A stretch of DNA of 63,989 nucleotides, counting the filler, from Octopus bimaculoides (Eukaryota), in NCBI RefSeq assembly GCF_001194135.2. It is 7 parts of 5 records of this genome, joined end to end, with 100 filler letters (N's around TTAATTAATTAA, not from the genome) between each part and the next. Parts side by side here need not be neighbours in the genome. Positions count along the whole stretch, not along the records: positions 32,676 to 49,861 come from NC_068993.1; 6 more parts are not named here. One strand, given 5' to 3'. A model generated the notes under the pieces. The model was given only the letters and a program-made list of their open reading frames with translations, did not search any database and was not told the DNA's origin. The position numbers and the translations under genes were made by a program. This document shows, one piece after another, positions 32,676 through 49,861 of this stretch (position 1 is the stretch's first letter; each line of letters opens with the position of its first letter).

Positions 32676-32678
32676 GAC

Positions 32679-32734
<56 letters not shown>

Positions 32735-32814
32735 GGAGTCAGAGACACAGAGAGAGAGACGGAGTGAGAAAGAGAGATATGTATGTACGCATGCACGTAT
32801 GTATGTATGTATGT

Positions 32815-33400
32815 AAATACTTCATCCAAAAGTACCATGTGGTTGTCTGTCGAGAAATTTCTTGCATGTTTATCCTACATGTACAATTTTGTAATTTCTA
32901 TTAATAAAAGAAGCATGTGTATGGGTAGAGAAATAATACAAAACCTTTTTCGAACTTCCTGTTTTTTTTAACTCCTTCTCTCGCTAGAAACCATCAAGGT
33001 GCTTGAAAAAGTGGTAATCGGTAAGAAAAAGGTCTGGGGAATAAGTTGGGTGGGGAAGAACTTCGTAGCCAAGTTCCCTCAACTTCTAGAGCGTCATTAG
33101 TGAAACGTGTGCTCAAGTATTGTCATGAAGAATGATTGACCGCTTCTGTTGACCAGTCTGAGACGCAGGTGTAGCAGTATTTCGTTTATTTTCGTAATTT
33201 CATGGCAATATGTTTCTGCAGTAATGGTTTTTAAGAAGTTATAGTGGATGAGTCCAGCAGTACACCACCAGTCAGCATAACCTTCTTTTTGAAGATCTCG
33301 GGTTTAGGGAAGGTTTTCGGTGTTTCATTTTTATCCAACCACTACGAAGAACGTTTTTTTGTTATTGTACAGAATCCACTTTTCATCGCCAGAACTCAAC
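32815..33400 (-). pseudogene. Mariner transposase relic (Hsmar1/SETMAR-like DD34D)
   Basis: GDEKWILYNN..WLDKNETPKTFPKP..GLIHYNFL..IILHDN..KLRELGYEVLPHPTYSPDLFLTDYHFFKHLDGF*, with stops and frameshifts. Confidence 0.9.
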
Positions 33401-33998
33401 TTGCCAGTCATCCGCTTTTCATGGTATGTGTAAGTGACCAAGATCACAATATTCCCTATAAACGAACACCCGGTCCGCTGCAGGATTTAAAGACAGTAAT
33501 TTTGAAGGTGGGGGTGCCAGTTAATGACATCAACCCCAGCAGTTAACTGAGACATTTTTATCGATCACGAAGAGAAAAGAAAACAAATTTGACATCAGTG
33601 GGATTTGAACTCCAAACGTTATGAGCTCCGAAAGATTCGAGATTGTGATTTCGATTCGCAGACAGATTGGTGCGTTGTATTCTTGTACAGATCATTACAT
33701 TTCACGTTGCTCTGCTGTCACTTCGACATCCGACGTGCGACACAACGTGAACCTCTACAGACAACGTCGGTGTGATATTAGCCATGAGCTAATGTGTCAC
33801 AGGAACTTACGACCACTAGAAACAAATCATCTGTACAGGTTGTTCAGCAAGACATTGCGGGACACCCCCGTATGTCTTTTACTATGTTAAAGACCATAAT
33901 AAAAAAAAATACACACAGGTTCCACGTGAGGAAACAAAATTACATATTCAGTGAGCATTTCATTGGCTCGGTGTGAACATGGCCTATTACAGTATTAA

Positions 33999-34402
33999 TC
34001 TTTTACTCTTTTATTTGTTTCAGTCATTTGACTATGGCCATGCTGGAGCACCGCCTTTAGTCGAGCAAATCGACCCCGGGACTTATTCTTTGTAAGCCTA
34101 GTACTTATTCTATCGGTCTATTTTGCCGAACCGCTAAGTTACGGGGACAGAAACACACCAGCATTGGTTGTCAAGCAATGCTAGGGGGACAAACACAGAC
34201 ACACAAACACACACACATATACATATATATACATATATACGATGGGCTTCTTTCAGTTTCCATCTACCAAATCCACTCACAAGGCTTTGGTCGGCCCGAG
34301 GCTATAGTAGAAGACACTTGCCCAAAGTGCTACGCAGTGGGACTGAATCCGGAACCATGTGGTTGGTAAGCAAGCTACTTACCACACAGCCACTCCTGTG
34401 CC
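33999..34402 (-). mobile_element. Full-length SINE family B inserted into the left arm only
   Basis: Complete head, microsatellite and tail; absent at the homologous site (~43720-43745) of the right arm. Confidence 0.9.
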
Positions 34403-35289
34403 TATGTCGGTTTGGTAAATTGGAAGGTTTGTGCTTTGAAGGTGATGGTAATCTTAACAGCCTTTTGTCAATCAAATATTGAAAGTAATTCAATAATACA
34501 GAGCTTTATTTGTTATCCGAATGTATCATAAGAAGTAGGGACATGTGCCTAACAACATGAAGCTCAGAATGAATTATATAAAGAAATACACAACAAGAGC
34601 AAACGTACATTAATAATATATTTCTTTAGTAAATAAGAGTTTCTTCACCGGATTTTCCAAAGATTATATCGTTGCTGGTAATATCTTCTCACTTGTAGGA
34701 TCTGGTGAAAGCGGTGGCAGAATCCAGTGTTCAAGATGCGTTAATATTTTATTAACATTTGCGAGACATCACTTACAGACTTACAGCGAAGACATGAGCT
34801 GGAATCAACATTGGCGGAGTATGAGCGGATAAGAAATGAATGAGTCCAGAGTATCTGAGTGAGCTTGACGCAAGATCAAGTAGAAATACTTGTAGGAGCG
34901 ATACTTCATGTCATTTTGAAGAGGAAGGAATGGGTATAGAGTAAAGTGAGCTGAATTCAACATGGTCAGGATATGAACGAATGAGAAGTGTGTGAGTCGA
35001 GAGTATCTGAGCGAACGTGACGCGAGATCAAGTAGCAGCGGTGGGCAGAGGCTGGAGAGTGGTTAGTGATTAGGTGCTAATCAAGCGAACGCCTGGGCGT
35101 GGCATAACACTGTCCCAGGTGTAGGAGCAATACTTCATGTCGATGAAACTTCAGGTTGAAGAGAGCAAGAATATGTTGGAGTATGGTGGGGATGATTCAT
35201 TTTCTGTCTTTGAATTAAAGGGTTATTGATTGGTGTTAAGTCCTAATTATGTTACCACAAAAGAACATAAGAGAGATGGCTGATTATAG

Positions 35290-35670
35290 CTAGGCCTAAT
35301 ACCTGGATCAACCATGGGAAATCCGGTTGAGTACACCTCATGTACAAAGAAGAAACATAATGAACTACTAGCAGAAATTCGAAACCAAACGACATGGTCT
35401 GTTGTGAAAGCAAGTGGTATTGTTTCACGACAATGCACACTCACATTCGCCTGCCCAAGCCCTTGAAATCACTGAAGAATTGGGTCTCCAGCTTTTGGAA
35501 TACTCTGCATAACATGCAGATCTCGTTCCTTCCGTTTATCAATTCTTTGGACTGCTCAAACATCCTTTAAGACGTCGTCGATGTGATAATGACGAGGATG
35601 TGCAGAACGCGCTGCATGGATACCTGTGCGATCAGCCGAAAAGCTTCTGAATTATCAAGTATGTGGATCC
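35290..35670 (+). pseudogene. Second mariner transposase relic (C-terminal catalytic part)
   Basis: LFHDNAHSH..EELGLQLLEYSA*HADLVPSVYQFFGLLKHPLRRRRCDNDEDVQNALHGYLCDQPKSF vs the HDNARPH..HPPYSPDLAPSDYHLFGPLK..F.NDEDV consensus. Confidence 0.8.
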
Positions 35671-36187
35671 TCCCAAAGTTGCCATATTGTAGGGTCGAAA
35701 ATGAGAACTTGTAGATGGTAAATGAACTTTTTAACCATTCGGCTGTAAAGTTTGTCTAGATGTAATAAAGATGTAATAAAGAGCGAAGAAAATCTTAACA
35801 GATAAAATGGAGTTGGCACTGAGATGATCCGAAGAGAAGCAATAATGAAGAACACAAATAAAAATTGAATATGGGTCCACAGAAACTCTACCCAGCATAA
35901 TCTAGGCACACGAAAGCAGCTAGAGAACAGAATATTTAGAATATTTGCTGATTTCCTCGCATTCACCTTCAAGCTCGCACACACTATTGATACTAAATAA
36001 ACTTAAAAAGGAAAGGGTGACCTCGGTGCAATTTGAACTCAGAATGTAGAGCGTCGGAAAAGTGAAAGAAAGTATTCTGCACAACATGCTCAACATTCCA
36101 CCAAACTACTACACGTGATATGTACTTACGATAATGAATTATTAAAGCTAAAGGTAATCGCGATTGGACTCCACTCTTTCTACCTGT

Positions 36188-36225
<38 letters not shown>

Positions 36226-37471
36226 NNNNNNNNNNNNNNNNNNNNNNNNNNNNNNNNNNNNNNNNNNNNNNNNNNNNNNNNNNNNNNNNNNNNNNNNNNN
36301 NNNNNNNNNNNNNNNNNNNNNNNNNNNNNNNNNNNNNNNNNNNNNNNNNNNNNNNNNNNNNNNNNNNNNNNNNNNNNNNNNNNNNNNNNNNNNNNNNNNN
36401 NNNNNNNNNNNNNNNNNNNNNNNNNNNNNNNNNNNNNNNNNNNNNNNNNNNNNNNNNNNNNNNNNNNNNNNNNNNNNNNNNNNNNNNNNNNNNNNNNNNN
36501 NNNNNNNNNNNNNNNNNNNNNNNNNNNNNNNNNNNNNNNNNNNNNNNNNNNNNNNNNNNNNNNNNNNNNNNNNNNNNNNNNNNNNNNNNNNNNNNNNNNN
36601 NNNNNNNNNNNNNNNNNNNNNNNNNNNNNNNNNNNNNNNNNATATATAATTATGTGTATTTCTTCTATCTTAATGAATAAAAATTCTTCTGATAAAATAA
36701 ATGGGTTAATAGAAACGTTCCGAACGTTCGTGTGTGCGGATGTGTGTATGTGTGTGTGCGTGTGTGTATAAATATGTATGAATGTGTGTATATAATTTTC
36801 CTCTTGTTCAAATTCCACCGAGGGAAACTTTGTCTTTCAGTCTTTCGTTAATTGTTAAGAGAGCATAAATAATGGGTGGTAGCCGGGTGGAATTTTATCA
36901 CAACGTAGCACTGATTGCTTTCCTGTACTTGCCTGAACGTTATACATTCTGAGTTCAAATTCCACAAGGTCAACTGGACCTTTAAGTCTTTCGAGATCGA
37001 TATAAAAAGTACCAGTCCTGAGCAATGAACTGGCTGAAACATAAGAACGCTGCACAGGATCCATTGCGTTCTTATTTCAAATCTCGTTGTTTCCTAGTCG
37101 GGTGGTAGAATTCATCCTCCGTTTAGCTTAACACATCATCCTCTGTTACATTGGGTAATTTCATCAGAGCGCACAATGTTAGAAGCATTCCTGCTAGGTC
37201 ATCGCTTTCAAGAAAACTTCATGTGTTTCAGAAAGAGCCCCTTTCAGAATATCAGGGGCGCTGCTTTCCCCATTGTGGGACAAAAAAAAAATGGAATAAA
37301 TGAAGTATAACATGAAATATAAGAAACATGAATGTAAAACGATAAACAACGGAAAGAGATTTCAAGTGGCTTTCTATGAAATTATTGTAAACATCCTGTT
37401 TCAGTTGCTTCTCCCAGTTTTATCGTTTTCATGTCAATATTTTGTAACTTAAATCACGAGACATTAACGAA

Positions 37472-37508
37472 TATAAATGCATATATTAAATACATAATAT
37501 TTCATATT
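37472..37508 (+). promoter_or_regulatory. Possible TATA box (37472-37478) and initiator (TCATATT, A at 37504)
   Basis: ~32-nt spacing, 87 nt upstream of ATG 37591; such motifs are common in AT-rich DNA. Confidence 0.25.
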
Positions 37509-37590
37509 TATATTAGCAACGAGAAACCATTTTGTTATTAAATTTCCCTGAAGGACTTGAGTCGAATTTTGAAGAAAGAAAAACAACGCT

Positions 37591-37684
37591 ATGGGAAGGA
37601 TAACGAACATCGTGATATTTTCACTTTTCGTGTTCTGTCAAGGAATATACGCAGCCGTTAATATTGAGACTAAAATAACGGAAG
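37591..37684 (+). CDS. Secreted-protein gene exon 1: signal peptide MGRITNIVIFSLFVFCQGIYA-AVNIETKITE
   Basis: ATGG start, basic n-region, hydrophobic core, small-residue cleavage region, consensus donor GAAG|GTGAGT, phase 1. Confidence 0.85.
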
Positions 37685-37981
37685 GTGAGTGTGTTATTTC
37701 AATTAGATATTTCACACACATTTATAACATGTTGACGATAATGATGATGATATGCTGTGCATGTATATGTGTGTGTGTGTGTGCGTATAACGTTCTGTTC
37801 TGTGACGGTAAACATGCAAATTATTATATATATGCATGTGTAAGCATGCAAACATATAAATAAATATATACAACTATACATACATGCGTAGGTATGTATG
37901 TACGTATGTACAAGTGAGTGGACGAATGAAAGTAAAAGGCACTGAAGGCGTTTAGTAAAACAGCTTGAATACCCCCGAGCA

Positions 37982-38139
37982 ACCTAAAGTTTCGCAGGCG
38001 TCTAACAGAAACCTAGCGCATTCAGGCAAGATTACTTTTTGACCAAACAGGGCAAGCCATTGAATTTCTATCTTTCGCCATTCGGTAATCTGTGCCTGAA
38101 CCCGCCAGGTTTTTGTTAGAAGCGTGCGAAACGTTAAGT
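37982..38139. repeat. Intronic inverted repeat, ~55-bp arms
   Basis: 37982-38035 vs reverse of 38085-38139, about 78% by eye. Confidence 0.7.
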
Positions 38140-38956
38140 CGTCTGGAACTGAATGAAACTGTCCTACATGACATGCTTCTGTCTATCTATGTATCTATAT
38201 ATATNNNNNNNNNNNNNNNNNNNNNNNNNNNNNNNNNNNNNNNNNNNNNNNNNNNNNNNNNNNNNNNNNNNNNNNNNNNATATATATCTGTCTATCTATC
38301 TATCTATCTACCTACCTATCTATCTATCTATCTATATATCTATCTATCTATCTATATATCTATCTATCCATCACTATATGTGTGTGCATGTGTGCGTGTG
38401 TGTATAAAATTAGAGATAGATCTAATTCTAAATTTATATATACTAAATCTATTTAGATGTATTTGTATGTGCAGTCGTATTTTCTCTAACCTTACACTCC
38501 AATCTCTTTCGCTGTCTCTTGTCCAATCCTCCAAAACGTTCCTCTTAGCCTTATCGATACATTCGTCTCTGTCAATCCCTAAGACCGTGTTCTGTTCATT
38601 TATTTCCTCTTTGTCCCCCGTCCGTCTACTCACAGTCTCGTCTTGAATCCTACTTATTTATATTTGTATGTCCACTTCTGTATTGCACATTTATTCATTT
38701 CTTGTTTATTCGTTCCTGAGCTGTTATGTTTGGTCCCATTTCGCGCCAGCTTCTTGTTGGTACCATCAGAATTGAATCAATATTACCGTAAGGCGCGAAA
38801 TTGCGATTGACCCTTTGGCAGAAAACTAATGAGGAATTGGTGACTTTCTGTGTCGGTTTTCTGTTTGCTTGTGCATGTATTGTTTTAAACTTACACAAAC
38901 ACAAACACACATTTACATACATATATACATGCATACATGCATGTATACATACGTAC

Positions 38957-39009
<53 letters not shown>

Positions 39010-39607
39010 CNNNNNNNNNNNNNNNNNNNNNNNNNNNNNNNNNNNNNNNNNNNNNNNNNNNNNNNNNNNNNNNNNNNNNNNNNNNNNNNNNNNNNNNNNN
39101 NNNNNNNNNNNNNNNNNNNNNNNNNNNNNNNNNNNNNNNNNNNNNNNNNNNNNNNNNNNNNNNNNNNNNNNNNNNNNNNNNNNNNNNNNNNNNNNNNNNN
39201 NNNNNNNNNNNNNNNNNNNNNNNNNNNNNNNNNNNNNNNNNNNNNNNNNNNNNNNNNNNNNNNNNNNNNNNNNNNNNNNNNNNNNNNNNNNNNNNNNNNN
39301 NNNNNNNNNNNNNNNNNNNNNNNNNNNNNNNNNNNNNNNNNNNNNNNNNNNNNNNNNNNNNNNNNNNNNNNNNNNNNNNNNNNNNNNNNNNNNNNNNNNN
39401 NNNNNNNNNNNNNNNNNNNNNNNNNNNNNNNNNNNNNNNNNNNNNNNNNNNNNNNNNNNNNNNNNNNNNNNNNNNNNNNNNNNNNNNNNNNNNNNNNNNN
39501 NNNNNNNNNNNNNNNNNNNNNNNNNNNNNNNNNNNNNNNNNNNNNNNNNNNNNNNNNNNNNNNNNNNNNNNNNNNNATATATATATATATATATATATAC
39601 ATTGGTG

Positions 39608-39674
<67 letters not shown>

Positions 39675-40066
39675 GTCTGTGTGTATCTTTGGGTTTGTGC
39701 TCTTAGTTGTGTTATTAACCGACCAAATCTTGATAACTAGTGTTCACTTGTTTATGTCCCAATAGCATAACAATTCCGCATAAGACACCGGTAGAGAAGT
39801 TTCACGATTAATAGTAAGCACTGGGGTGGATTTCACTCACTAAACTTTTCATGGTGGCTTGGGGGGCATCGCTTGGGAGCATCGCTGCAGTTCAATGAAT
39901 GAAAACTAGTGAAGATTAGAGATAAAAGATTCATTTTTGCGTGTCCGCTGCGTGAGTAGGTGCGAGTTAGCATGTGTTTATATACGTGTGCATCTCCTTA
40001 CACATGATGCTATCACGTAATACAGTGACATATTTATGCATTTATTTCCATTCGTTTTGTTTACAG

Positions 40067-40264
40067 GCAAGACTTCCCATGGAATAGCTCTTTGGCAGGA
40101 AATGATGTACAAACGGCGAGTGTATGAAATGCTCAACAAGAAGATAACAGATATCGGTTCGCATGACGGTACAAAAAATAGTGGATTGCAAAATAGGAAC
40201 CTCGAGTGCATATGGAAAAATGTTGTGCTAACATGTAATGCAACTTTACCTCGCCTTCAGACAT
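40067..40264 (+). CDS. Exon 2 (GKTSHGIALWQEMMYKRRVYEMLNKK...LECIWKNVVLTCNATLPRLQT)
   Basis: Acceptor TTCGTTTTGTTTACAG, donor CAT|GTAAGT, 198 bp, phase 1-1, open, joins exon 1 in frame. Confidence 0.85.
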
Positions 40265-40859
40265 GTAAGTATTACATTGACATTAACACCTCTTTTTCGA
40301 ACATCAAAATCTCAGTGAAAGCAAGAATTAAATCAAACATCTTGTGAATCTTCGACCTACAAGAATTGCCAATCAAAACTCAAACGAATCACAGACTGCC
40401 GTCTCAAAAGGAAGACAAACAAATACAATGAAAATTGCAATAAAAATGTCTGAATAGAAACAAGGAATGAGTCTACCGGGCGCAGCTGTTTTGACGCTGA
40501 TGTGTTTGCATGGTTGTCGGGATACTCAAACTCTTTTGGCTATCCGTCTCTTTCTTTGATATATGTATGTATATATATATATATATATATGCATTGATTA
40601 CTTACATATATAAACAGACTTACACCAACTACCATTCAATATAAATACTTGATTTGTCAGAGTTCATCCCGCCTCTCAAGGAGGATTAGTACTTACCAAA
40701 TAACTACTGAGACTAGCACAACTCGAAAAGAGAGTTAATTTTACGGATGAAGAATTTCACCAAAATTGACATGCCGTTAAAGTAAACGACGGGCTTATGT
40801 CTGGAGATATCAAGTCAGACTCGTGCGCTTGTTTCTGGCTCAACAGGCAGATATATACA

Positions 40860-41040
40860 CCTAGTTTAAATTTACTGAAGGCAAAAGACGAAGACAGGTG
40901 TGGGAGCAACAAGCAAGAATATTAGTTTAACCCTCTAGACATATGGAAAAGTCTTTTGTATTTCGAGCCTACGCTCTTTGAAAGAAAGTATTAAGAGGAA
41001 AAAATGGGGAGAGAATGAAAAAAAACGGAGATAGATAAAA
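40860..41040 (-). mobile_element. Penelope-like terminal-repeat fragment, same family as 7030-7200
   Basis: AAGAGCGTAGGCTCGAAA..AAAAGACTT..GCTTGTTG..ACACCT.TCTTCGTC shared. Confidence 0.5.
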
Positions 41041-41067
41041 CGTGCAGCATTCAACGGTCCAGCATGG

Positions 41068-41098
<31 letters not shown>

Positions 41099-41149
41099 TA
41101 GATAAATAGATAAATAGATACATAGATAAGATAGATAGACCGACGTGCT

Positions 41150-41285
41150 TCTACATAGCTTCCGTCTACGAAATTCACTAACGAAGCATTGGTCAGCCCA
41201 TGTCTATAGCAGAAAACACTTGCCAGTGCTGGGATTGAACTGAAACCAAATGGCTGGGAAGCGAACTTCTTAAACATACACCCAT
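41150..41285 (-). mobile_element. SINE family B head, degenerate
   Basis: AGCTTCCGTCTACGAAATTCACT..CTATAGCAGAAAACACTTGCC..GGGATTGAAC. Confidence 0.65.
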
Positions 41286-41448
41286 GACAGCACCAAACGT
41301 TTTTAATTTGTTAGTATTTATCATTTATTTACTTTTTAGTGTCTGTGCTATTTCTGTTTTCATGGCATCTTACAATTTCACAGATACTAAACAACTCGGA
41401 CATAACGTGATAACAGGACCATCTTCTGTTATTTGAAATCCTTTACAG

Positions 41449-41568
41449 ATACTAGTAATATGGACCACAGTGGACCCGAAGTTCTTGAAATCCTAAGCTC
41501 TCCCACACAGCTTACCACCGAATGCATATCAATTTCATTCACCTCTTTCATCTCTTCCCATTCGTTCA
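41449..41568 (+). CDS. Exon 3 (YTSNMDHSGPEVLEILSSPTQLTTECISISFTSFISSHSF), MAM-like motifs
   Basis: Acceptor CCTTTACAG, donor TCA|GTAAGA, 120 bp, phase 1-1, open; DHS, LxSP and CxSxxF resemble the MAM motifs DHT, LxSP, CLxF. Confidence 0.85.
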
Positions 41569-42182
41569 GTAAGATGCCGGAAATTTTGAACTAAGCAAAG
41601 ACACATGTTTTTACGTCCCAGTAGTTACGTCTCTTCCTGTTTACATTGTTGTTCACAAGCCGTAATAAATAAAACAATTTCAAATATTATATTTTTCTCT
41701 TTTCCAGTTTCTGTTATACTGCGAATATCCAAGTATTTAATCCATATCACCGTTTTAACAGATGGTAATGAAATTAAAAATCAAATAATGCGTGAGTGTC
41801 ATTTAACATTCCTAATACAATATATACATACATACATACATACATACATACAAACAAACAAACATACATGCATACATGCATACATACATACATACATACA
41901 TACAGTTCTATGTTCATAGATGCACTCATTGATACATATACGCGTGTGTGTATTAGATACAGATCTATGTATACACGTATACAGGTGGTTGTTTTTGTGT
42001 ACGTGTGTATGTTTGTATATATATATATATATCCATGTGAGTGAGTGCGGATGAGTAGGTGTTTGCGCATGAGTGGATGTGTGTATGTATTACGAATATA
42101 CATCTAGTGAGCTTATATATTAATGTCTTTTTTTGCATTTCTGTAATCTCTAAAATTAGATTTTCTTCTATATTTCTTACAG

Positions 42183-42419
42183 ATATGTATAACGATCCTG
42201 TTAGAAGTCTGAGTTTCACCGTAGGATCCGCAAGTGTTTTGTTTAGTATATGCGTGGAAAATCGCACTGAGAAACATTTTAGAATATGTTTTCGCGTTAA
42301 TTACAGCGTATTCTTCTTCCAAAAAACATTGTATCTTGGTTGTTTCAATAAACCCCCTCTTTCTTCTCAAAATATCTCATTAGACAGTGTCAAGGATTCG
42401 TTGCAATTTTCCGATACTG
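42183..42419 (+). CDS. Exon 4 (NMYNDPVRSLSF...HFRICFRV...NISLDSVKDSLQFSDT)
   Basis: Strong acceptor TTCTATATTTCTTACAG in phase 1; best phase-1 donor is CTG|GCAAGT (GC-AG). Otherwise the frame runs to TAA at 42482-42484. FRIxF and ISLDSV resemble MAM FxIxFE and IALDDI. Confidence 0.75.
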
Positions 42420-42869
42420 GCAAGTTCCGCAGCGTTGAAAATAACGTTGAATACCTTTGTTATTTCATGGAGGATCAGAAGTAAATATGATTTGAACTTA
42501 GTGACAACAAGCTACATATGGTCATTAATGTATCTGAATGAAAACAAAGCTAATGTATATATTGATATTACAATGAACGCATAACCCTTTCGACTATGAA
42601 CCAGTATGTTTGCCCAATTATTTACCTTTCTACACGGATATGTTATGATCTATGGAAAACGTCTACTCTGTATTCCCTTGACGAGAATTGAAACAACTCT
42701 CACTTTGACAATTATTGTTTTATTCTACTTATTTTCAACATTTCAAAGCCAAAGAGACAGTTGTTAACCGAGAGAAACCTCAAAACTTATAATCCATCTT
42801 TTTCTCCCACTTCGCCCTCACCCACCTCTCTTTTCCTCCTTAATTGCTTCCAGCAACTCATCTGTCCAA

Positions 42870-44075
42870 CCATATCCGTCGAGCATTACACGAACTTTTA
42901 TTTCTGTAATTTATGGGAACATAAACAAGCGTTGAACAATTACATCATTTCCGACATTGTGTACTTGCTTGTCGATGTACTTCTTTCAGAAATCCACATA
43001 CTTGATTATTCAGAAGCTTTTCGGCTGATCGCACAGGTATATATGCAGCACGCCCTCCACATCTTCGTCATTATAACATCGACGACATCTTAAAGGATGT
43101 TTGAGCAGTCCAAAGAATTCATACTCTGCCCAAGTTGAATTCAGCTCACTCTACTTTATGCCCATTTCTTCCTGCTCAGAACATCACCTTTCTGACATTA
43201 CCTGCATTCATGCTCATGTCTTCGCTGTACGTCTGTAAGTGACGTCTCGCAAGTTTAAATAAAACATTAACGGCAACTTAGACCCTGGATTCTGACTCCA
43301 CTTTCTCCAAACCCAAGTGAGAAAATATTATCAGCAACGAAATAATCTTTGAAGAAGCCGATGAAGAAACACTTATATCCTCAAATATATTATTAACGTA
43401 CATTTGCGCCTGTTGTGTATTTCTTTATATAATTCGATTTGTTCTGTGCTTCATGTTGTTAGACATATGTCTCTACTTCTTATGATACACTTGGATAACA
43501 CAAATAAAACTTTATATGATTGAGTTACTCTCAATATTTGACTGAGAAAAGACTGTTAAAGTTACCAAAATGATAGTAGGTTTATAGAATTATTTAATTG
43601 TTTATGGTAATCCAATGCGTATCCATGACTTTACCCCATACCATTAATTTTCATGCGATCTTTCGTACGACCAACAAATAAATAATTGCCATTTGACTTC
43701 GGGTTTTGTAAACCTTCAAACTTACTTAACAAACAATACTGTAAAAGACGATGTACACACTGATCGAATGAAATGCTCACTGGATCTTTAATGTAGTAAA
43801 AGACATACGGGGGTGTCCCGCAATGTCTTGCTGAAAACCTGTACAGATGATTTGTTTCTAGTGGTCGTAAGTTCCTGTAAAACATTAGCTCATGGCTAAC
43901 ATCACACCGACGTTGTCTGTAGAGGTTCACGATGTGTCGCACGTCGGATGTCGAAGAGATAGCAGAGCAACGTGAAATTAAGTGTTTTGCACAAGAATAG
44001 AACGCACCAATCTGCGAATCGAAACCATAATCTTGATCCCGTTAGTGCAAAACTCTAATCACTACACTACACGGA
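42870..44075 (-). repeat. Right arm of the inverted duplication (mariner tail + spacer + SINE family A)
   Basis: Reverse complement aligns to 33633-35672, lacking the SINE-B insertion and ~34970-35530; keeps more of the mariner C-terminus and the SINE-A head. Confidence 0.85.
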
Positions 44076-44793
44076 TCATTCACGCTCTTTGTTATATATA
44101 CACACAAACACACACACACACACACGTATATATATATANNNNNNNNNNNNNNNNNNNNNNNNNNNNNNNNNNNNNNNNNNNNNNNNNNNNNNNNNNNNNN
44201 NNNNNNNNNNNNNNNNNNNNNNNNNNNNNNNNNNNNNNNNNNNNNNNNNNNNNNNNNNNNNNNNNNNNNNNNNNNNNNNNNNNNNNNNNNNNNNNNNNNN
44301 NNNNNNNNNNNNNNNNNNNNNNNNNNNNNNNNNNNNNNNNNNNNNNNNNNNNNNNNNNNNNNNNNNNNNNNNNNNNNNNNNNNNNNNNNNNNNNNNNNNN
44401 NNNNNNNNNNNNNNNNNNNNNNNNNNNNNNNNNNNNNNNNNNNNNNNNNNNNNNNNNNNNNNNNNNNNNNNNNNNNNNNNNNNNNNNNNNNNNNNNNNNN
44501 NNNNNNNNNNNNNNNNNNNNNNNNNNNNNNNNNNNNNNNNNNNNNNNNNNNNNNNNNNNNNNNNNNNNNNNNNNNNNNNNNNNNNNAACTCTAATCACTA
44601 CACTACACGGATCATTCACGCTCTTTGTTATATATACACACGCGCATACCGACACACACGCGCACTCACGTATGCATGTATGTGTGTATGTATACGTTCA
44701 TTATATGTGTAGAGGGACCGATTGGAGGATCAATAAATCTTAATAATAATAGAATTTTTCATTCTTCAATTTTCTTTATTTCGCTTTTTACAG

Positions 44794-44810
44794 TTGTCTG
44801 TTACAATTAA
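44794..44810 (+). CDS. Candidate terminal exon 5a (VVCYN*)
   Basis: Long pyrimidine acceptor TTTTCTTTATTTCGCTTTTTACAG, phase 1; would add a closing Cys as expected at a MAM C-terminus. Confidence 0.4.
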
Positions 44811-45029
44811 TCTCAAAAAAAATATCTCTAAGCTCAATATATTTATCAACGAACCCAATATCTATATTTGTCTTCCGATTAATGTTTTTTTATTTTTATT
44901 TTGTCAATCTAAAAATAGTTCTCTTGTTGGGTTTATGCAATTGAATATGAAGCTCTCAAATCTTCAAGGTAGTCATTGAATTGATATTTGCGTTATTGAC
45001 ATAGAAATTGGTCCGCCACGTCGACCGTT

Positions 45030-45202
45030 CTAATATTGTTTTTTTGTGCAGCCAATTTGATTGTTGAAATTATAATGATCAGCATGATAATCAGCCTTAA
45101 AACACAACAGGACACTTTTCGTGGAGAAAGATTCGAGTTTCATCTCAAACTCGAGTTTTACATGCGAAACAGGGATATCAAGCTTGCGGTCTTTATTGCG
45201 AT
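45030..45202 (-). CDS. Candidate terminal exon of the - strand gene (DRNKDRKLDIPVSHVKLEFEMK...QIGCTKKQY*)
   Basis: Acceptor TTACTTTATATCGTTCACAG, phase 1, compatible with a phase-1 donor at 47246. Confidence 0.4.
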
Positions 45203-45245
45203 CTGTGAACGATATAAAGTAATTATACATAATAAAGTGAACTAG
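45052..45245 (+). CDS. Alternative terminal exon 5b of the + gene (ANLIVEIIMISMIISLK...HNKVN*)
   Basis: Acceptor TTGTTTTTTTGTGCAG, phase 1, open; codon-registered antisense to 45030-45202, so one may be a shadow. Confidence 0.3.
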
Positions 45246-45475
45246 AGTGTATAAATGCCCACAAGCTCCCACACACACACACACATACACACGTGCATAT
45301 GATTTGAATAATACATTAACTCCGAATAAATGTGTTTAGTACACTTTCTTTTGTTTGTCCACTCACTCGTGTGTGTATNNNNNNNNNNNNNNNNNNNNNN
45401 NNNNNNNNNNNNNNNNNNNNNNNNNNNNNNNNNNNNNNNNNNNNNNNNNNNNNNNNNNNNNNNNNNNNNNNNNNN

Positions 45476-45876
45476 TATTTAAAAGAGTTCCAACTCTGTC
45501 TGTTTTTTATGTTTTATTTATATTCTTGTAAAATTAATGTGGGATATAGAATATGGAATATATAATATATAATATAAAAATGGATGGTACAGTCTGTTAC
45601 AGTCTGTTACAGTCTGTCAGATACCGGCCATGATGAAATACCACAAGGTATTGAAAATACGTATTCGCCTTTATATATTTAATCCTTTATATTGAACACT
45701 CAATATTTCATATATTCAATAAGACATATTCCATATATTCAATAAGACATTCAATACTTTATTTCATTGTACCATCCATTTTTATATTATATATTCCATA
45801 TTCTATATCCCACATTAATTTTACAAGAATATAAATAAAACATAAAAAACAGACAGAGTTGGAACTCTTTTAAATA
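45476..45876. repeat. Young fold-back, ~110-bp near-identical arms, hammerhead-like motif in the loop
   Basis: 45476-45590 vs reverse of 45768-45876 differ essentially by one ~5-nt indel; left arm abuts a gap. Confidence 0.85.
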
Positions 45877-47189
45877 AAATTATATATATACATACATATA
45901 CTCTATTATTTCATTTCCTCCTTCTCTACTTTTCTTCTCTTCAAGTTTTTAGGTAAACTCCTGCACAAATTATATGCTGTCCTTGTAATGTAGAAGCTGT
46001 TAAGTTCAATACTCTCCAAAGCCGATTGTTTTTTGTTTTTTTTTTCTTTTTGATTAAATATTATCGCCAATAAATTACTTTTACTATATAAACCTCTGAC
46101 ATGTATCGACTTTCACTTATTTCAGAAAACAATACTAATGTCCTTTGAGCGATTGGTACTTACCATCTAAATGCCCGTTCATCTTTACGCTACCTGCGTT
46201 AACTTCGTAAACTAGATACGGGTAGTAGTCATGCATTTTCACACATACTGAAAAATATAAACAAGACAGAAGACCAAACTTTATTAGTATGAAAAACAAA
46301 GAACAAACTCCATTACATAAATAATGGGTTTCTGATAAAAGTACAAGAGCAGCAACTTAAGTGGGCCAACGGTTTGTCTTTACTATCGATCCTAGTACTT
46401 CACTGGTACTTTATTCTTGTTAGTACCGTGGCCCCAAGGCGGTAAACTGACAGAATCGTTAGCACACCGGACACAATACTTAACGGCAATGGGGACTCGT
46501 TGATAATTTATATAAACCCTTGTCAATATTGAGTACCCTTCGTACCCAAGAACTTTAACTGTTGATGACTTAGTACCTGAATTTTTTGAAAATAGGAATG
46601 TATACTAGATATAAGTACTTGGCTCATATCATTTCATTAGTACTATTTTTAATGAAATGGCGATTCAAGTTTTGATATAGCTCCAAATACAATCTATTGA
46701 AAACAGTTCCTGTATAATTTCTGTTGTTTTGGGAGGGTCATTATACCTATAATAAACATACGCAATGGTTATATTTCACTCCTTTACTATTTATTTCTTT
46801 AACCAATAAACTGATAATCGATTGCTTGGTTAATCGTTTGACCAATCATTCTATAAATTAGGTTTGTTAGCAATATCTGTTTCAGCATATGTGATCACAC
46901 AAGAGATCTTACAAACCAAATACGAAAATGCTTGTATATTATTTGCAGAAAGCACAACAAATGCCTCACTTTTACGAGCTTTGATAAAAAAGTATCAGTA
47001 CTGGTTCTGTAACAATAAAAATACAACACATATCAATTCGGTATTTAATTTCCTTCGCAGTTGTTCCCTTCTGAAGTCATACACTTTATCTTGTGTCATT
47101 CATAGAAGCATTTCAAGAACACCTTCCTTGAGGATAGGAGCAGCTGCTTCGTCGCATTCTCTTCGATCTCTTCGACGCCCTGGATTTCT

Positions 47190-47380
47190 TCAATGCCTTG
47201 GATTTTTCGACGCCTCGGATTTCTTTTTCCACTTCAAAGACTGACCCTTGACTTCGGTGTCATGACCCGTTTTGAAAATGTTTTCGTCTCCCAAGACATA
47301 ATCAAGGAGATCCTTCGCAGCTGAATCCTGATCTTCTTTTCGAGACGACCACACTCTGCAGACTTTACTTCCAGGCACTA
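47190..47380 (-). CDS. Minus-strand gene exon B (LVPGSKVCRVWSSRKEDQDSAAKDLLDYVLGDENIFKTGHDTEVK...), unknown product
   Basis: Acceptor TTTGTTGTTTACAG, phase 1, only open frame; ends at TGA 47190 or at donor AGG|GTCAGT after 47246. Confidence 0.7.
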
Positions 47381-47669
47381 CTGTAAACAACAAACGTGAA
47401 CAAGAGCGTTTTAACTAGTGTGTATGCGAGACAGAGTTGAAGGTGAATTTGTGCCAAGCGGCTTCAGACTGCGTATTTTAGCTCCGTTACCATAGCAACA
47501 GTCCAAATATTTTTGATCAGACCTAGTATTTTAACATGGAAGATTATGCGTTGTAAATAAATACCAAATAATAATCAAACAAAAATAACATACAAATAAA
47601 TGTACATACCTATGTTCAGAATTAAATGGAATTTAAAACAGCACTTTCCATTTCTACCTTCCCACTTAC

Positions 47670-47813
47670 ACTTCATTCTTGGCGCAGCAGCCTTCACGTC
47701 TATGTTTGTAATTTCCAGAGCAAAACCAGTATTGGGGGTTTGGGTGAGCTTTTCATCAACCTGGAGTTCTTCAACAATTTCTTCTAGAACATTAATCATT
47801 TCATCATCTATAC
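47670..47813 (-). CDS. Minus-strand gene exon A (IDDEMINVLEEIVEELQVDEKLTQTPNTGFALEITNIDVKAAAPRMK), unknown product
   Basis: Acceptor TTTACAATATTTTTAG, donor AGT|GTAAGT, 144 bp, phase 1-1; splices in frame to exon B over a 289-bp intron. Confidence 0.75.
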
Positions 47814-48440
47814 CTAAAAATATTGTAAAAGGCATTCATCAATATTTACCTTTTTGACCAGAACATACACAAACGCACTCACAGACGCATATGCGTCCTA
47901 ACACGACGGACATCCACCCAGTAGACCCTGTTTCCACCTACAATATCAGCCGCCCCACACATATAGGATCCCTATACACACTCCATACCTGCACAAATAC
48001 TCCGAATGAATTAACCAAAATAAAAACAAAACACACACAAACCGGCAAACAGATACCTGTGAGACCTTTGGACACCGGTTAACCTCCTTTCCTCGACAAC
48101 GCTAAACATATAGTACCACTCTACAAGAACACCAGGCCCAAAACCAACACACATTTTTCATACACACATTTCCAGAAAAATCTTGTTGTCTTGCAATATC
48201 TCTAGAGGTGGATTTCGTGCCGAAAGACATATCTTGTTCAGTTGCGAATAAAAACATCGTAAAATAATTGAAACAAATGAACAAATGAAAAATCCAAAAT
48301 AGTATTAATTTAGTCGCAGGTTCTTTTATATTTTGGTTCTGTGACCTAACTTATAACCTAACTCAAAATATATGCAACATCGTACTTCTTTAATTGAGTA
48401 CAGGAGTTCAACTATGCAGAGACATTAGATCCTCATACTA

Positions 48441-48697
48441 TTGGGTTGGTGCATAATTATTGCGGCTTTTTTTTTTTTTTTCAATAAATTTTATTCAACA
48501 AAAACAATAACTATATTTAACAAAAACATCATTAAATGACGGTCTGACCGTCTGCCAAGCAAATGGGAAGCAGTAATTGAAGTAGATGGTGAATATGCTC
48601 CGGAATAATCATTTAGAGAGGTTTTTGTTACATGTTGTTATTGTTTTTGTTGAATAAAATTTGTTGAAAAAAAAGCAATAATTATGCACTAACCCAA
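48441..48697 (+). mobile_element. Mariner-derived MITE
   Basis: TIRs TTGGGTTGGTGCATAATTATTGC / GCAATAATTATGCACTAACCCAA (Hsmar1/Made1-like), TA on the left, internal RLPSKWEAVIEVDGEY transposase C-terminal remnant. Confidence 0.85.
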
Positions 48698-48801
48698 TGC
48701 ATGTTGCTTGTTGCGCATTTAAAGGAGAACATATGTGTATATATGTCGGGAGATGGGTTGCATTCCTATGTATATATATATGTGTGTGTGTGTGTATGTG
48801 C

Positions 48802-49369
48802 AAAATTAGTGTACATTTATACACAAAAGGGGTGACCCTAACAGGACACCTTACATGCTAAAAGGAACAGTCTAATTCCAAACCATGGTTAAGAGTAATT
48901 TCGAAGGGGATGAAAAATAAAACCATTTTCAATAGTTACCACTTGTTCCTAGGTTTCGAACATTAATGAACAAATAAAATAATTCGTTATCTTCATCAGC
49001 AAGAGCGCTAAAAATTAACGTATATTTATGTGACAAATACACAGCACATGCCCCATCTCTATACATCATAATTTTTCAAATCCACCGCGCAAGCGCAGTT
49101 ATAGTCGGCAGCGAATAAAAATATATTTTCCAACTTTCTTTAAAATTACGAAAATCATACTAAGAAAATTTATATAGGGTAGAAAATTACAGAAATTTTC
49201 TACCAGTGGCTAGCTAACATGGTACAAGTGGTAACTATTAAAAATGTTTTTATTTTTTATCCCCTTCGAAAGTACTCTTAACCGTGGTTTGGACTCTGAC
49301 TGTTACTTTTATCATGTGAGGTGTCACGTTAGGGTCACCTCTTTTGTGTATAAATTGTACACTAATTTT
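48802..49369. mobile_element. MITE/fold-back with ~148-bp TIRs
   Basis: 48802-48948 vs reverse of 49221-49369, about 85-90% identical by eye. Confidence 0.85.
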
Positions 49370-49861
49370 ACATGAATGATATGTTGTCTATTGACTATTT
49401 TATGCATGCTAGTCACTGGTAAAAAAATTTTTTAATATGATTTTCTTAATCCTCGCCAGCGATTCTTAACGCCTACCTCTGTCGGTCTTATGTGCTGATT
49501 TTCAAAGCGGTAAAAGTGTAAGCAACAAATAAAATGGGTGGCTTATTAACAATTTGAACTTTTGTGGGTTTTGATTTATTTTAACTCTTGTTTCTAGCAA
49601 TAGCTGGTGTCGGTCAGTAACCTCCATCACTTTTGTAACCTCTAATAATTTTGCCCTTAGGTTCAAATTGCTAATAAGCCACCCATTTAAATTGTTGCTT
49701 TGTGTGCGTGTGCGTTCGTGCGTGTGCGTTCGTGCGTGTGTGTGTGTATGTGTCTATGTCTGTGTCACTGTGTATGCGTGCGTGTGCATAAATGTATCTA
49801 TATATAAAGGTATAGACCTATCTTCCTCTCTCTCTCCCCTTGTAAATACATACATATATAT

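What the first reader, a model, noticed from the sequence alone, without database searches (positions are those of the whole stretch)
37591..44810. Secreted protein with a highly divergent MAM-like domain, all-phase-1 exons and a probable GC-AG intron
Four exons splice in frame (94+198+120+237 nt) into signal peptide, ~45-aa spacer and ~150-aa Cys-containing region with MAM-like motifs in order (CxWxN, DHS, LxSP, CxSxxF, FRIxF, ISLDxV, possible closing Cys). The domain is split by phase-1 introns and seems to stand alone, whereas MAM usually occurs in larger modular proteins. May be lineage-specific (inference).
Basis: partly seen in the sequence, partly recalled or inferred. Interest (0 to 1): 0.7.

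Follow-up and report, generated by a model that had tools for sequence, protein, structure and literature searches.

The report
Fast-evolving octopus secreted DUF4773-like gene

Summary
The window piece is Octopus bimaculoides DNA. The gene is the RefSeq locus LOC106876288 (XP_014780267.1, 225 aa, "uncharacterized protein").

What holds:
- The signal peptide is plausible, and all introns are phase 1.

What does not hold:
- The true exon 3 is 41708-41791 (84 nt), not 41449-41568.
- Exon 4 reads through to the stop at 42482-42484. The proposed GC donor is absent in O. sinensis, where the read-through frame is conserved.
- No MAM signal appears in Pfam (E≤10), in PDB sequences, or in Foldseek on a confident model.

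All three assembly gaps lie outside exons. The two in intron 1 match plain microsatellites in the gap-free O. sinensis locus.

The protein belongs to a multi-copy, clustered family seen so far only in octopods. A tail-to-tail paralogue lies in the same piece. The family consensus gives Pfam DUF4773 as top hit (E=1.2e-4, below the curated cutoff).

The gene evolves very fast. dN/dS is about 1.4-1.6, and exons diverge about twice as fast as introns, yet the reading frame is kept.

Function is unknown. A paralogue occurs in octopus skin mucus.

The parts
37591..37684 (+). Exon 1: start codon, signal-peptide-like segment (MGRITNIVIFSLFVFCQGIYAAVNIETKITE-G), ends in phase 1
   Evidence: translation is identical to XP_014780267.1; the paralogue-only HMM hits this frame (E=0.026). 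The paralogue's exon 1 has the same layout (91 nt, phase 1).
37685..40066 (+). Intron 1 (phase 1), containing assembly gaps 38205-38279 and 39011-39576 flanked by microsatellites
   Evidence: The gap-free O. sinensis L001 is collinear and has only microsatellite arrays opposite both gaps.
40067..40264 (+). Exon 2 (198 nt, phase 1-1): spacer predicted helical at low confidence, plus the start of the Cys domain (LECIWKNVVLTCNATLPRLQT)
   Evidence: The paralogue-only HMM hits it at E=2e-4. The C-x-W and second Cys are invariant in the family.
41449..41568 (+).
   Evidence: It is absent from all annotated proteins, and four alternative isoforms are absent from the 15-billion-protein collection. 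It adds 0.8 bits to the family profile score. Its 95% identity to O. sinensis is within the intron background. All six differences change the amino acid and remove DHS and LxSP.
41708..41791 (+). True exon 3 (84 nt, phase 1-1): FSVILRISKYLIHITVLTDGNEIKNQIM-H, β-strands of the domain
   Evidence: One search gives the exact RefSeq match. O. sinensis and O. vulgaris have the same exon. The neighbouring paralogue also has an 84-nt exon here. It adds 21 bits to the paralogue profile score. pLDDT is 86-91 in the AF2 model.
42183..42484 (+). Exon 4 to the stop codon (42482-42484): the rest of the β domain, the conserved KxxLSSQNISLDSVKDSLQFSD tail, and the C-terminus ...YLCYFMEDQK*
Evidence: The paralogue-only HMM hits it at E=2e-14.
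44794..44810 (+).
   Evidence: It lies 2.3 kb past the stop. It sits in a 52-nt stretch (44766-44817) identical in O. sinensis. That stretch carries AATAAA on the minus strand at 44780, about 250 nt downstream of the neighbour's stop at 45030. It is therefore probably the neighbour's 3' end (inference).
45030..47813 (-). Tail-to-tail paralogue LOC106876287 (XP_014780266.1, 183 aa): exons 47813-47610, 46247-46164 and 45202-45030; exon 1 lies outside the piece
   Evidence: tblastn and HMM hits. The model was rebuilt and found by exact look-up, and UniRef names it 'DUF4773 domain-containing protein'.

Best explanation
SHOWN.
- The locus is Octopus bimaculoides LOC106876288. It is a four-exon gene: 37591-37684, 40067-40264, 41708-41791, 42183-42484.
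- It encodes a 225-aa protein with four parts: an N-terminal signal-peptide-like segment; a spacer of about 50 residues, predicted helical at low confidence; an all-β Cys-containing domain of about 110 residues (nine predicted strands); and a tail predicted to be disordered.
- It belongs to a multi-copy family found here only in octopods (Octopus spp. and Argonauta). The members share the exon plan, with all introns in phase 1.
- The family is clustered on one chromosome, and a convergent paralogue lies 2.5 kb downstream in this piece.
- The family is best described as a divergent branch of Pfam DUF4773, not MAM.
- The gene evolves unusually fast between O. bimaculoides and O. sinensis. Even so, the frame, the splice sites, most Cys and two N-glycosylation sequons are kept.
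- Two of the six family cysteines (the second of the CC pair and the next one) are lost together in this lineage. Two new cysteines (C149, C218) are conserved in the orthologues.

INFERRED.
- The protein enters the secretory pathway, is N-glycosylated, and is released as a small disulfide-stabilised β-domain protein.
- It probably acts at an exposed or mucosal surface by binding an external partner that itself changes quickly, such as a microbe or parasite. Diversifying selection would then drive its divergence.
- The biochemical activity of DUF4773 is unknown.
For: Gene model:
- Exact match to XP_014780267.1.
- Same model in O. sinensis and O. vulgaris.

Family:
- A profile of the two orthologues finds four further representatives with E between 8.6e-19 and 1.4e-4, all from octopods.
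- Consecutive O. vulgaris accessions (CAI9731748/753/755) and shared chromosomes point to clustering.
- A paralogue lies in the piece.

DUF4773:
- The family consensus gives PF15998 as top hit: E=1.2e-4, 23 bits, profile positions 2-113 of 118.
- Individual paralogues hit it at E=0.005-0.044 over the same span.
- UniRef names the neighbour and A0A0L8GLC6 as DUF4773 proteins.

Structure:
- AF2 with a 10-sequence alignment gives pLDDT 85-91 for most of residues 80-180 (one ten-residue block at 70), with nine β-strands.

Evolution:
- dN/dS is 1.35 overall and 1.57 for the mature part.
- Exons are 78-81% identical, against 87-90.5% for non-coding DNA.
- Nonsynonymous sites differ twice as often as intron sites, Fisher p=7e-8.
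- Only 1.9% of simulated neutral sequences with the same number of changes keep the frame open.
- Indels are in frame.
- The sequons NAT/NIT and NIS are conserved.

Secretion context:
- A paralogue (A0A0L8GLC6) is in the O. vulgaris skin-mucus proteome (PMC11431876).
- DUF4773 transcripts are abundant in the secretory locust pleuropodia (PMC6966819).
- A DUF4773 gene marks an oyster haemocyte cluster (PMC12064177).
Against: - The window protein itself gives no DUF4773 hit at E≤10, so the link is transitive, through the paralogues.
- The consensus score (23 bits) is below Pfam's curated cutoff (27).
- The neighbour that UniRef calls DUF4773 does not hit the current Pfam model at E≤10.
- dN is not significantly above dS (Fisher p=0.25). 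The case for positive selection therefore rests on the intron comparison and on frame retention.
- No transcript or peptide evidence for this particular gene was found. Its protein cluster has no member from the Logan run assemblies, and no paper cites it.
- No signal-peptide predictor was available.
- The proposed function is an inference from paralogues and from the pattern of evolution.
Confidence: 0.72

Rival explanations
1. Relaxed constraint: the gene is a recently redundant tandem duplicate drifting towards pseudogenisation. Its dN/dS near 1 would then reflect neutrality rather than adaptive change, and it has no current function.
For: - dN/dS of 1.35 is not statistically different from 1.
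- Two family cysteines are lost.
- There are no Logan transcript-derived members in its cluster, although two paralogues have them.
- It is the most diverged orthologue pair seen in the family: 63-66% identity, against 84% for LOC106872506 and LOC115218663.
Against: - The frame stays open in three species despite 113 substitutions; the simulated probability is 0.019.
- All indels are multiples of three, and all six splice sites are kept.
- There is a run of 19 invariant residues, and invariant Cys, Trp and Gly positions.
- Nonsynonymous divergence is twice the intron divergence. Neutrality predicts they would be equal, not that dN would be higher.
Confidence: 0.18
2. One reading: a stand-alone, highly divergent MAM domain encoded by exons 37591-37684, 40067-40264, 41449-41568 and 42183-42419, plus a GC-AG intron to 44794.
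For: - The splice sites and open frame of 41449-41568 exist and are retained in O. sinensis.
- The domain is β-rich.
- C-x-W and x-C-F motifs are present.
Against: - There is no Pfam MAM hit at E≤10 for any model, paralogue or consensus.
- There is no PDB MAM chain by sequence and no MAM or ConA-like fold by Foldseek.
- The exon is absent from three species' annotations and from the protein collection.
- The exon adds nothing to the family profile score.
- DHS and LxSP are not conserved.
- The GC donor is absent in O. sinensis.
Confidence: 0.03
3. 41449-41568 is a rarely used alternative cassette exon (phase 1-1, 120 nt). It would be included with or instead of exon 3 in some tissue, giving an isoform with a 40-residue insert.
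For: - It has a good acceptor (tttacag) and donor (GTAAGA), and an open frame in both species.
- Its phase is compatible with inclusion.
- It is 95% identical between the species.
Against: - No annotated isoform contains it.
- Its conservation equals that of several other intron windows and runs on past the donor.
- All six substitutions are nonsynonymous.
- Inserting it would split, and substituting it for exon 3 would remove, strands of a confidently predicted β domain.
Confidence: 0.07

Closest known systems
Pfam DUF4773 (PF15998), a secreted stand-alone domain of unknown function in invertebrates
   Same: - A signal peptide is followed by a single Cys-containing β domain of about 110-120 residues.
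- The family consensus and several paralogues match the profile end to end: positions 2-113 of 118, E=1.2e-4 for the consensus.
- UniRef already names two paralogues as DUF4773 proteins.
- The expression context is secretory or barrier tissue: octopus mucus, locust pleuropodia, oyster haemocytes.
   Different: - The window protein itself scores nothing against the profile.
- All scores are below the curated cutoff.
- Two of the six family cysteines are lost and two others gained.
- It has a long spacer, predicted helical at low confidence, and a conserved C-terminal tail.
- It evolves very fast.
MAM domain (PF00629; meprin, A5/neuropilin, RPTPmu)
   Same: It is β-rich, extracellular and Cys-containing, with a C-x-W near the start of the domain. 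Phase-1 introns are typical of extracellular modules (general knowledge).
   Different: - There is no profile, sequence or fold match.
- The domain is about 110 residues, not about 170.
- Three of the seven motifs came from a non-exon.
- Structure search returned only scattered weak matches to unrelated β-rich proteins, none of them a MAM or ConA-like jelly roll.
Lineage-restricted, tandemly expanded secreted gene families under diversifying selection (for example mucosal, immune, venom or reproductive proteins)
   Same: - Clustered paralogues.
- A signal-peptide exon followed by symmetric phase-1 exons.
- dN/dS of 1 or more, with exons diverging faster than introns.
- Gain and loss of cysteines.
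- A paralogue present in skin mucus.
   Different: This is an analogy of evolutionary pattern only. No activity, partner or tissue is known for this gene.

Membership tests
MAM domain (PF00629) | Match to the Pfam MAM profile | tested here: not met
MAM domain (PF00629) | Sequence similarity to solved MAM-containing proteins (RPTPmu, meprin, neuropilin) | tested here: not met
   phmmer against all PDB chains at E≤10 returned only a thioredoxin, at E=0.73.
MAM domain (PF00629) | β-sandwich jelly-roll (ConA-like) fold of about 170 residues | tested here: not met
   The AF2 domain (pLDDT 85-91) has nine sequential strands in about 110 residues. Foldseek against PDB gave no hit with E≤0.001, and no MAM entry was among the 50 matches listed.
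MAM domain (PF00629) | Ordered conserved motifs lying in expressed, conserved coding sequence | tested here: not met
   DHS, LxSP and CxSxxF lie in 41449-41568, which is not an exon. DHS and LxSP are mutated in O. sinensis.
DUF4773 (PF15998) | Whole-protein score at or above Pfam's gathering cutoff (27 bits) | tested here: not met
   Window protein: no hit at E≤10. Best paralogue: 17.7 bits, E=0.005. Family consensus: 23 bits, E=1.2e-4.
DUF4773 (PF15998) | Top-ranked, end-to-end collinear match of the Cys domain to the profile | tested here: met
   This holds for the family, not for the window protein alone. The consensus covers profile positions 2-113 of 118 and is ranked first by 100-fold in E-value. 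P0006/P0013 cover 2-112 and P0004/P0010 cover 9-101.
DUF4773 (PF15998) | Demonstrable homology of the window protein to proteins filed as DUF4773 | tested here: met
   A profile of the window protein and its orthologue finds P0003-P0007 at E from 8.6e-19 to 1.4e-4. A paralogue-only HMM scores the window protein at 99.5 bits. The neighbour P0014 aligns with all family Cys and is named DUF4773 by UniRef.
DUF4773 (PF15998) | Profile-profile (HHpred-type) confirmation against a bona fide DUF4773 alignment | not testable with these tools
   No DUF4773 seed sequences could be retrieved.
GC-AG intron | Donor conserved in the orthologue, and the downstream exon needed to complete the frame | tested here: not met
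   The donor GC at 42420 is AC in O. sinensis. The read-through frame to the stop is conserved, and RefSeq models in both species use it.
Secreted protein (classical signal peptide) | N-terminal n-h-c region with a cleavage site, and conserved N-glycosylation sequons | tested here: inconclusive
   The sequence shows R3, a hydrophobic core at 7-15, and small residues at 18-22. All paralogues have the same pattern. Two sequons are conserved. No SignalP was available, and no protein-level data exist for this gene.

The most novel reading that the evidence does not exclude
An octopod-specific, tandemly expanded branch of the uncharacterised DUF4773 family is evolving under diversifying selection at a barrier surface such as skin mucus. 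This member shows disulfide rewiring: paired loss of two family cysteines and gain of two others. It also has coding divergence twice the intron rate. On this reading it is a candidate fast-evolving recognition or defence factor in cephalopods.
Probability: 0.3. Interest if true: 0.45.

Novelty: new member of a known kind. Interest (0 to 1): 0.22.

Why it matters
- The result corrects a tempting but wrong reading. There is no orphan MAM domain and no GC-AG intron here.
- It shows how motif-spotting can be misled by a splice-site-flanked open frame inside an intron.
- It places an "uncharacterized" RefSeq protein in a DUF4773-like family that is clustered and found so far only in octopods.
- It flags the gene as one of the rare cases where exons diverge faster than introns. 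Together with a paralogue in skin mucus, this makes the family a reasonable candidate for cephalopod mucosal or innate-defence studies.
- It also offers a small handle on the unknown function of DUF4773.
- Overall it remains an ordinary lineage-specific secreted gene with no demonstrated function.

Tried and rejected
1. MAM homology. PDB sequence search and Foldseek also gave nothing.

2. AF2 with only the two orthologues gave pLDDT 38 and was unusable. It was repeated with 10 sequences.

3. Two word-indexed profile searches meant to reach DUF4773 proteins outside octopods returned only family members. No profile-profile test was therefore possible.

4. Its 95% identity is matched by several intron windows. 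The substitution pattern is uninformative: six of six changes are nonsynonymous, but the chance of seeing no synonymous change is about 0.2.

5. The family HMM on six-frame fragments cannot detect either candidate exon 3 alone, because both are too short. This was resolved by scoring whole alternative proteins.

6. Rfam and tRNA scans of the piece found nothing.

7. A literature search for the locus and accession numbers found nothing.

8. The end of the upstream gene in L002 (positions 1-148) shows no family motif.

9. It could not be determined whether the N-terminal peptide of A0A0L8GLC6 listed in the mucus paper's supplement was observed by mass spectrometry or derived in silico.

Full report
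**What is in the sequence.**
The piece (32676-49861) is identical, gaps included, to Octopus bimaculoides chromosome CM046613.1 in assembly GCA_001194135.2. A search of 5.8 billion proteins returned two hits. One is XP_014780267.1, "uncharacterized protein LOC106876288" of O. bimaculoides (225 aa). The other is XP_029653854.1 of O. sinensis (237 aa).

**The gene model.**
- The RefSeq protein is reproduced exactly by exons 37591-37684, 40067-40264, 41708-41791 and 42183-42484.
- The last exon runs through the proposed GC donor to the stop at 42482-42484.

**Assembly gaps.**
- Gaps 38205-38279 and 39011-39576 both lie in intron 1.
- The O. sinensis locus (L001, no N) is collinear with the window at 85-89% identity.
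- Opposite the two gaps it has only (TA)n, (TG)n and (ATAG)n arrays. It also has the same exon 1-exon 2 junction. Nothing coding is hidden there.
- Gap 44139-44586 is 1.65 kb past the stop. Its flanks share an exact 55-nt duplicate (44051-44105 and 44587-44641), which suggests an assembly artefact.

- The stretch 41449-41568 is open and keeps its AG and GT in O. sinensis.
- No annotated protein in O. bimaculoides, O. sinensis or O. vulgaris contains it.
- Four alternative isoforms are absent from a 15-billion-protein collection.
- Its 95% identity to O. sinensis is not special. Ungapped non-coding identity at the locus is 90.5%, and several 200-nt intron windows reach 94-95.5%.
- All six substitutions change the amino acid. 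They remove two of the three MAM motifs read in this exon: DHS becomes SQS, and LSSP becomes LISS.
- The decisive test used an HMM built only from paralogues, leaving out this gene, its orthologue and its neighbour.
- The 84-nt exon is therefore homologous to the family, and the 120-nt stretch contributes nothing.
- The neighbouring paralogue also has an 84-nt phase 1-1 third exon.

**The GC-AG intron.**
- In O. sinensis the donor GC is AC.
- The read-through frame is conserved there (KFRS-ENNV ... YLC-FMED), with an in-frame 21-nt insertion.
- That block carries AATAAA on the minus strand at 44780, about 250 nt downstream of the stop of the convergent neighbour. It is more simply read as the neighbour's 3' end (inference).

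**Not MAM.**
- phmmer against all PDB chains finds only a thioredoxin, at E=0.73.
- AlphaFold2 with the two orthologues alone was useless (pLDDT 38).
- With ten family members, most of residues 80-180 reach pLDDT 85-91 (one ten-residue block at 70), with nine consecutive β-strands.
- Foldseek against PDB gives nothing below E=0.077. The weak matches are scattered β-rich proteins (neuraminidase, galectin-11, LpqH, avidins), not a MAM or ConA-like jelly roll.

**What it is.**
A profile of the two orthologues, run with HMMER against 1.84 billion representative proteins, found four further representatives with E between 8.6e-19 and 1.4e-4. All come from octopods: O. bimaculoides, O. sinensis, O. 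vulgaris and Argonauta hians.

The family shares these features:
- a signal-peptide exon;
- a variable acidic spacer;
- a domain with six cysteines (C-x-W ... CC ... C ... x-C-F ... LGC-x-x-K).

The genes are clustered:
- O. vulgaris accessions CAI9731748, CAI9731753 and CAI9731755 lie within a few genes of each other.
- The O. bimaculoides members share one chromosome.
- Within the piece, a tail-to-tail paralogue (LOC106876287, XP_014780266.1) occupies 45030-47813 on the minus strand. Its first exon lies beyond the piece.

The link to DUF4773:
- UniRef names that neighbour "DUF4773 domain-containing protein".
- Individual paralogues hit Pfam DUF4773 weakly but end to end (E=0.005-0.044).
- The family consensus hits it as the clear top match: E=1.2e-4, 23 bits, profile positions 2-113 of 118.
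- That score is still below the curated 27-bit cutoff, and the window protein itself scores nothing.
- I therefore call the family a divergent DUF4773-like branch, and the window gene a member by transitive homology.

**Evolution.**
- Between O. bimaculoides and O. sinensis the protein is only 63-66% identical, while the surrounding non-coding DNA is 87-90% identical.
- Nei-Gojobori estimates are dN=0.20, dS=0.15 and dN/dS=1.35, rising to 1.57 for the mature part.
- Exons 2-4 are 78-81% identical, less than the introns.
- Nonsynonymous sites differ twice as often as intron sites (p=7e-8).
- dN against dS alone is not significant (p=0.25).
- Against simple decay: only 1.9% of simulated sequences carrying 113 random substitutions keep the frame open.
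- The indels are in frame and all splice sites are retained.
- Two N-glycosylation sequons are conserved, and 19 consecutive residues (LSSQNISLDSVKDSLQFSD) are invariant.
- This lineage has lost the second Cys of the CC pair and the following Cys together, which suggests they form a disulfide in the family. It has gained C149 and C218, both conserved in the orthologues.

**Likely function (inference).**
- The protein is a secreted, glycosylated small β-domain protein.
- A paralogue (A0A0L8GLC6) has the same type of N-terminus. It was quantified in the O. vulgaris skin-mucus proteome and falls with senescence (PMC11431876).
- DUF4773 transcripts are among the most abundant in the secretory locust pleuropodia (PMC6966819).
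- A DUF4773 gene marks an oyster haemocyte cluster (PMC12064177).
- Combined with the rapid evolution, a role in binding a rapidly changing external partner at a barrier surface is the most likely reading.
- Drift after duplication is the main rival.
- No expression data for this particular gene could be reached with these tools.

**Verdict.**
The gene is real and already annotated, but uncharacterised. The useful residue is a corrected gene model, an assignment to a DUF4773-like octopod family, and evidence of unusually fast coding evolution.

Noticed in passing
window 45030-47813 (-); exon 1 at L002 23574-23664: A convergent paralogue, LOC106876287 (183 aa), has the same exon plan: 91, 204, 84 and 173 nt, all introns phase 1. 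UniRef calls it a DUF4773 protein, but the current Pfam model does not hit it at E≤10. Its top hit is a spurious CBF_beta match (E=0.003). Its cluster holds a 163-aa product from a 911-nt Logan contig, which suggests it is transcribed and spliced.
   Followed up: yes
window 44051-44105 and 44587-44641: An exact 55-nt duplicate flanks the gap 44139-44586 on both sides. The gap is probably an assembly artefact with overlapping contig ends, not missing sequence.
   Followed up: partly
window 44766-44817: A 52-nt block is 100% identical to O. sinensis in otherwise 90% identical DNA. It contains AATAAA on the minus strand at 44780, so it is probably the polyadenylation region of the neighbouring gene.
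   Followed up: partly
window 40882-41005 and 41098-41224 (intron 2): Two segments have several extra copies on both strands in the O. sinensis locus (L001 6105-6208, 21920-22041, 18929-19056). They look like dispersed repeats, possibly SINE-like, and were not classified.
   Followed up: no
window 41792-42182 versus L001 14188-17020: Intron 3 is 391 nt in O. bimaculoides but 2.8 kb in O. sinensis. This is a large insertion or deletion, or a repeat expansion, between the species.
   Followed up: no
P0005/P0011 (LOC106872505, O. bimaculoides): This paralogue carries the start of a second domain after the first (…LKCKWKKKAGHCSVLLNNLPWLYVNMTVVP…). That fits domain duplication through the symmetric phase-1 exons.
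   Followed up: no
P0007 (Argonauta hians GAB1601733.1), spacer region: The spacer between the signal peptide and the domain is expanded by NAINDNIAS-type tandem repeats. The spacer is therefore length-variable across the family.
   Followed up: no
L001 2889-3065 (+) and 3886-3969 (+): There are weak family-like tblastn hits (E from 3.5e-4 to 0.05) upstream of the O. sinensis orthologue. They may be a further copy or a pseudogene fragment. The matching O. bimaculoides region falls in a 4.5-kb gap outside the piece.
   Followed up: no
window protein residues 88-98, 149 and 218: The third and fourth family cysteines are lost together (CC becomes CN, and FC becomes FS). Two lineage-specific cysteines are conserved in O. 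sinensis and O. vulgaris. This suggests a rewired disulfide pattern.
   Followed up: partly
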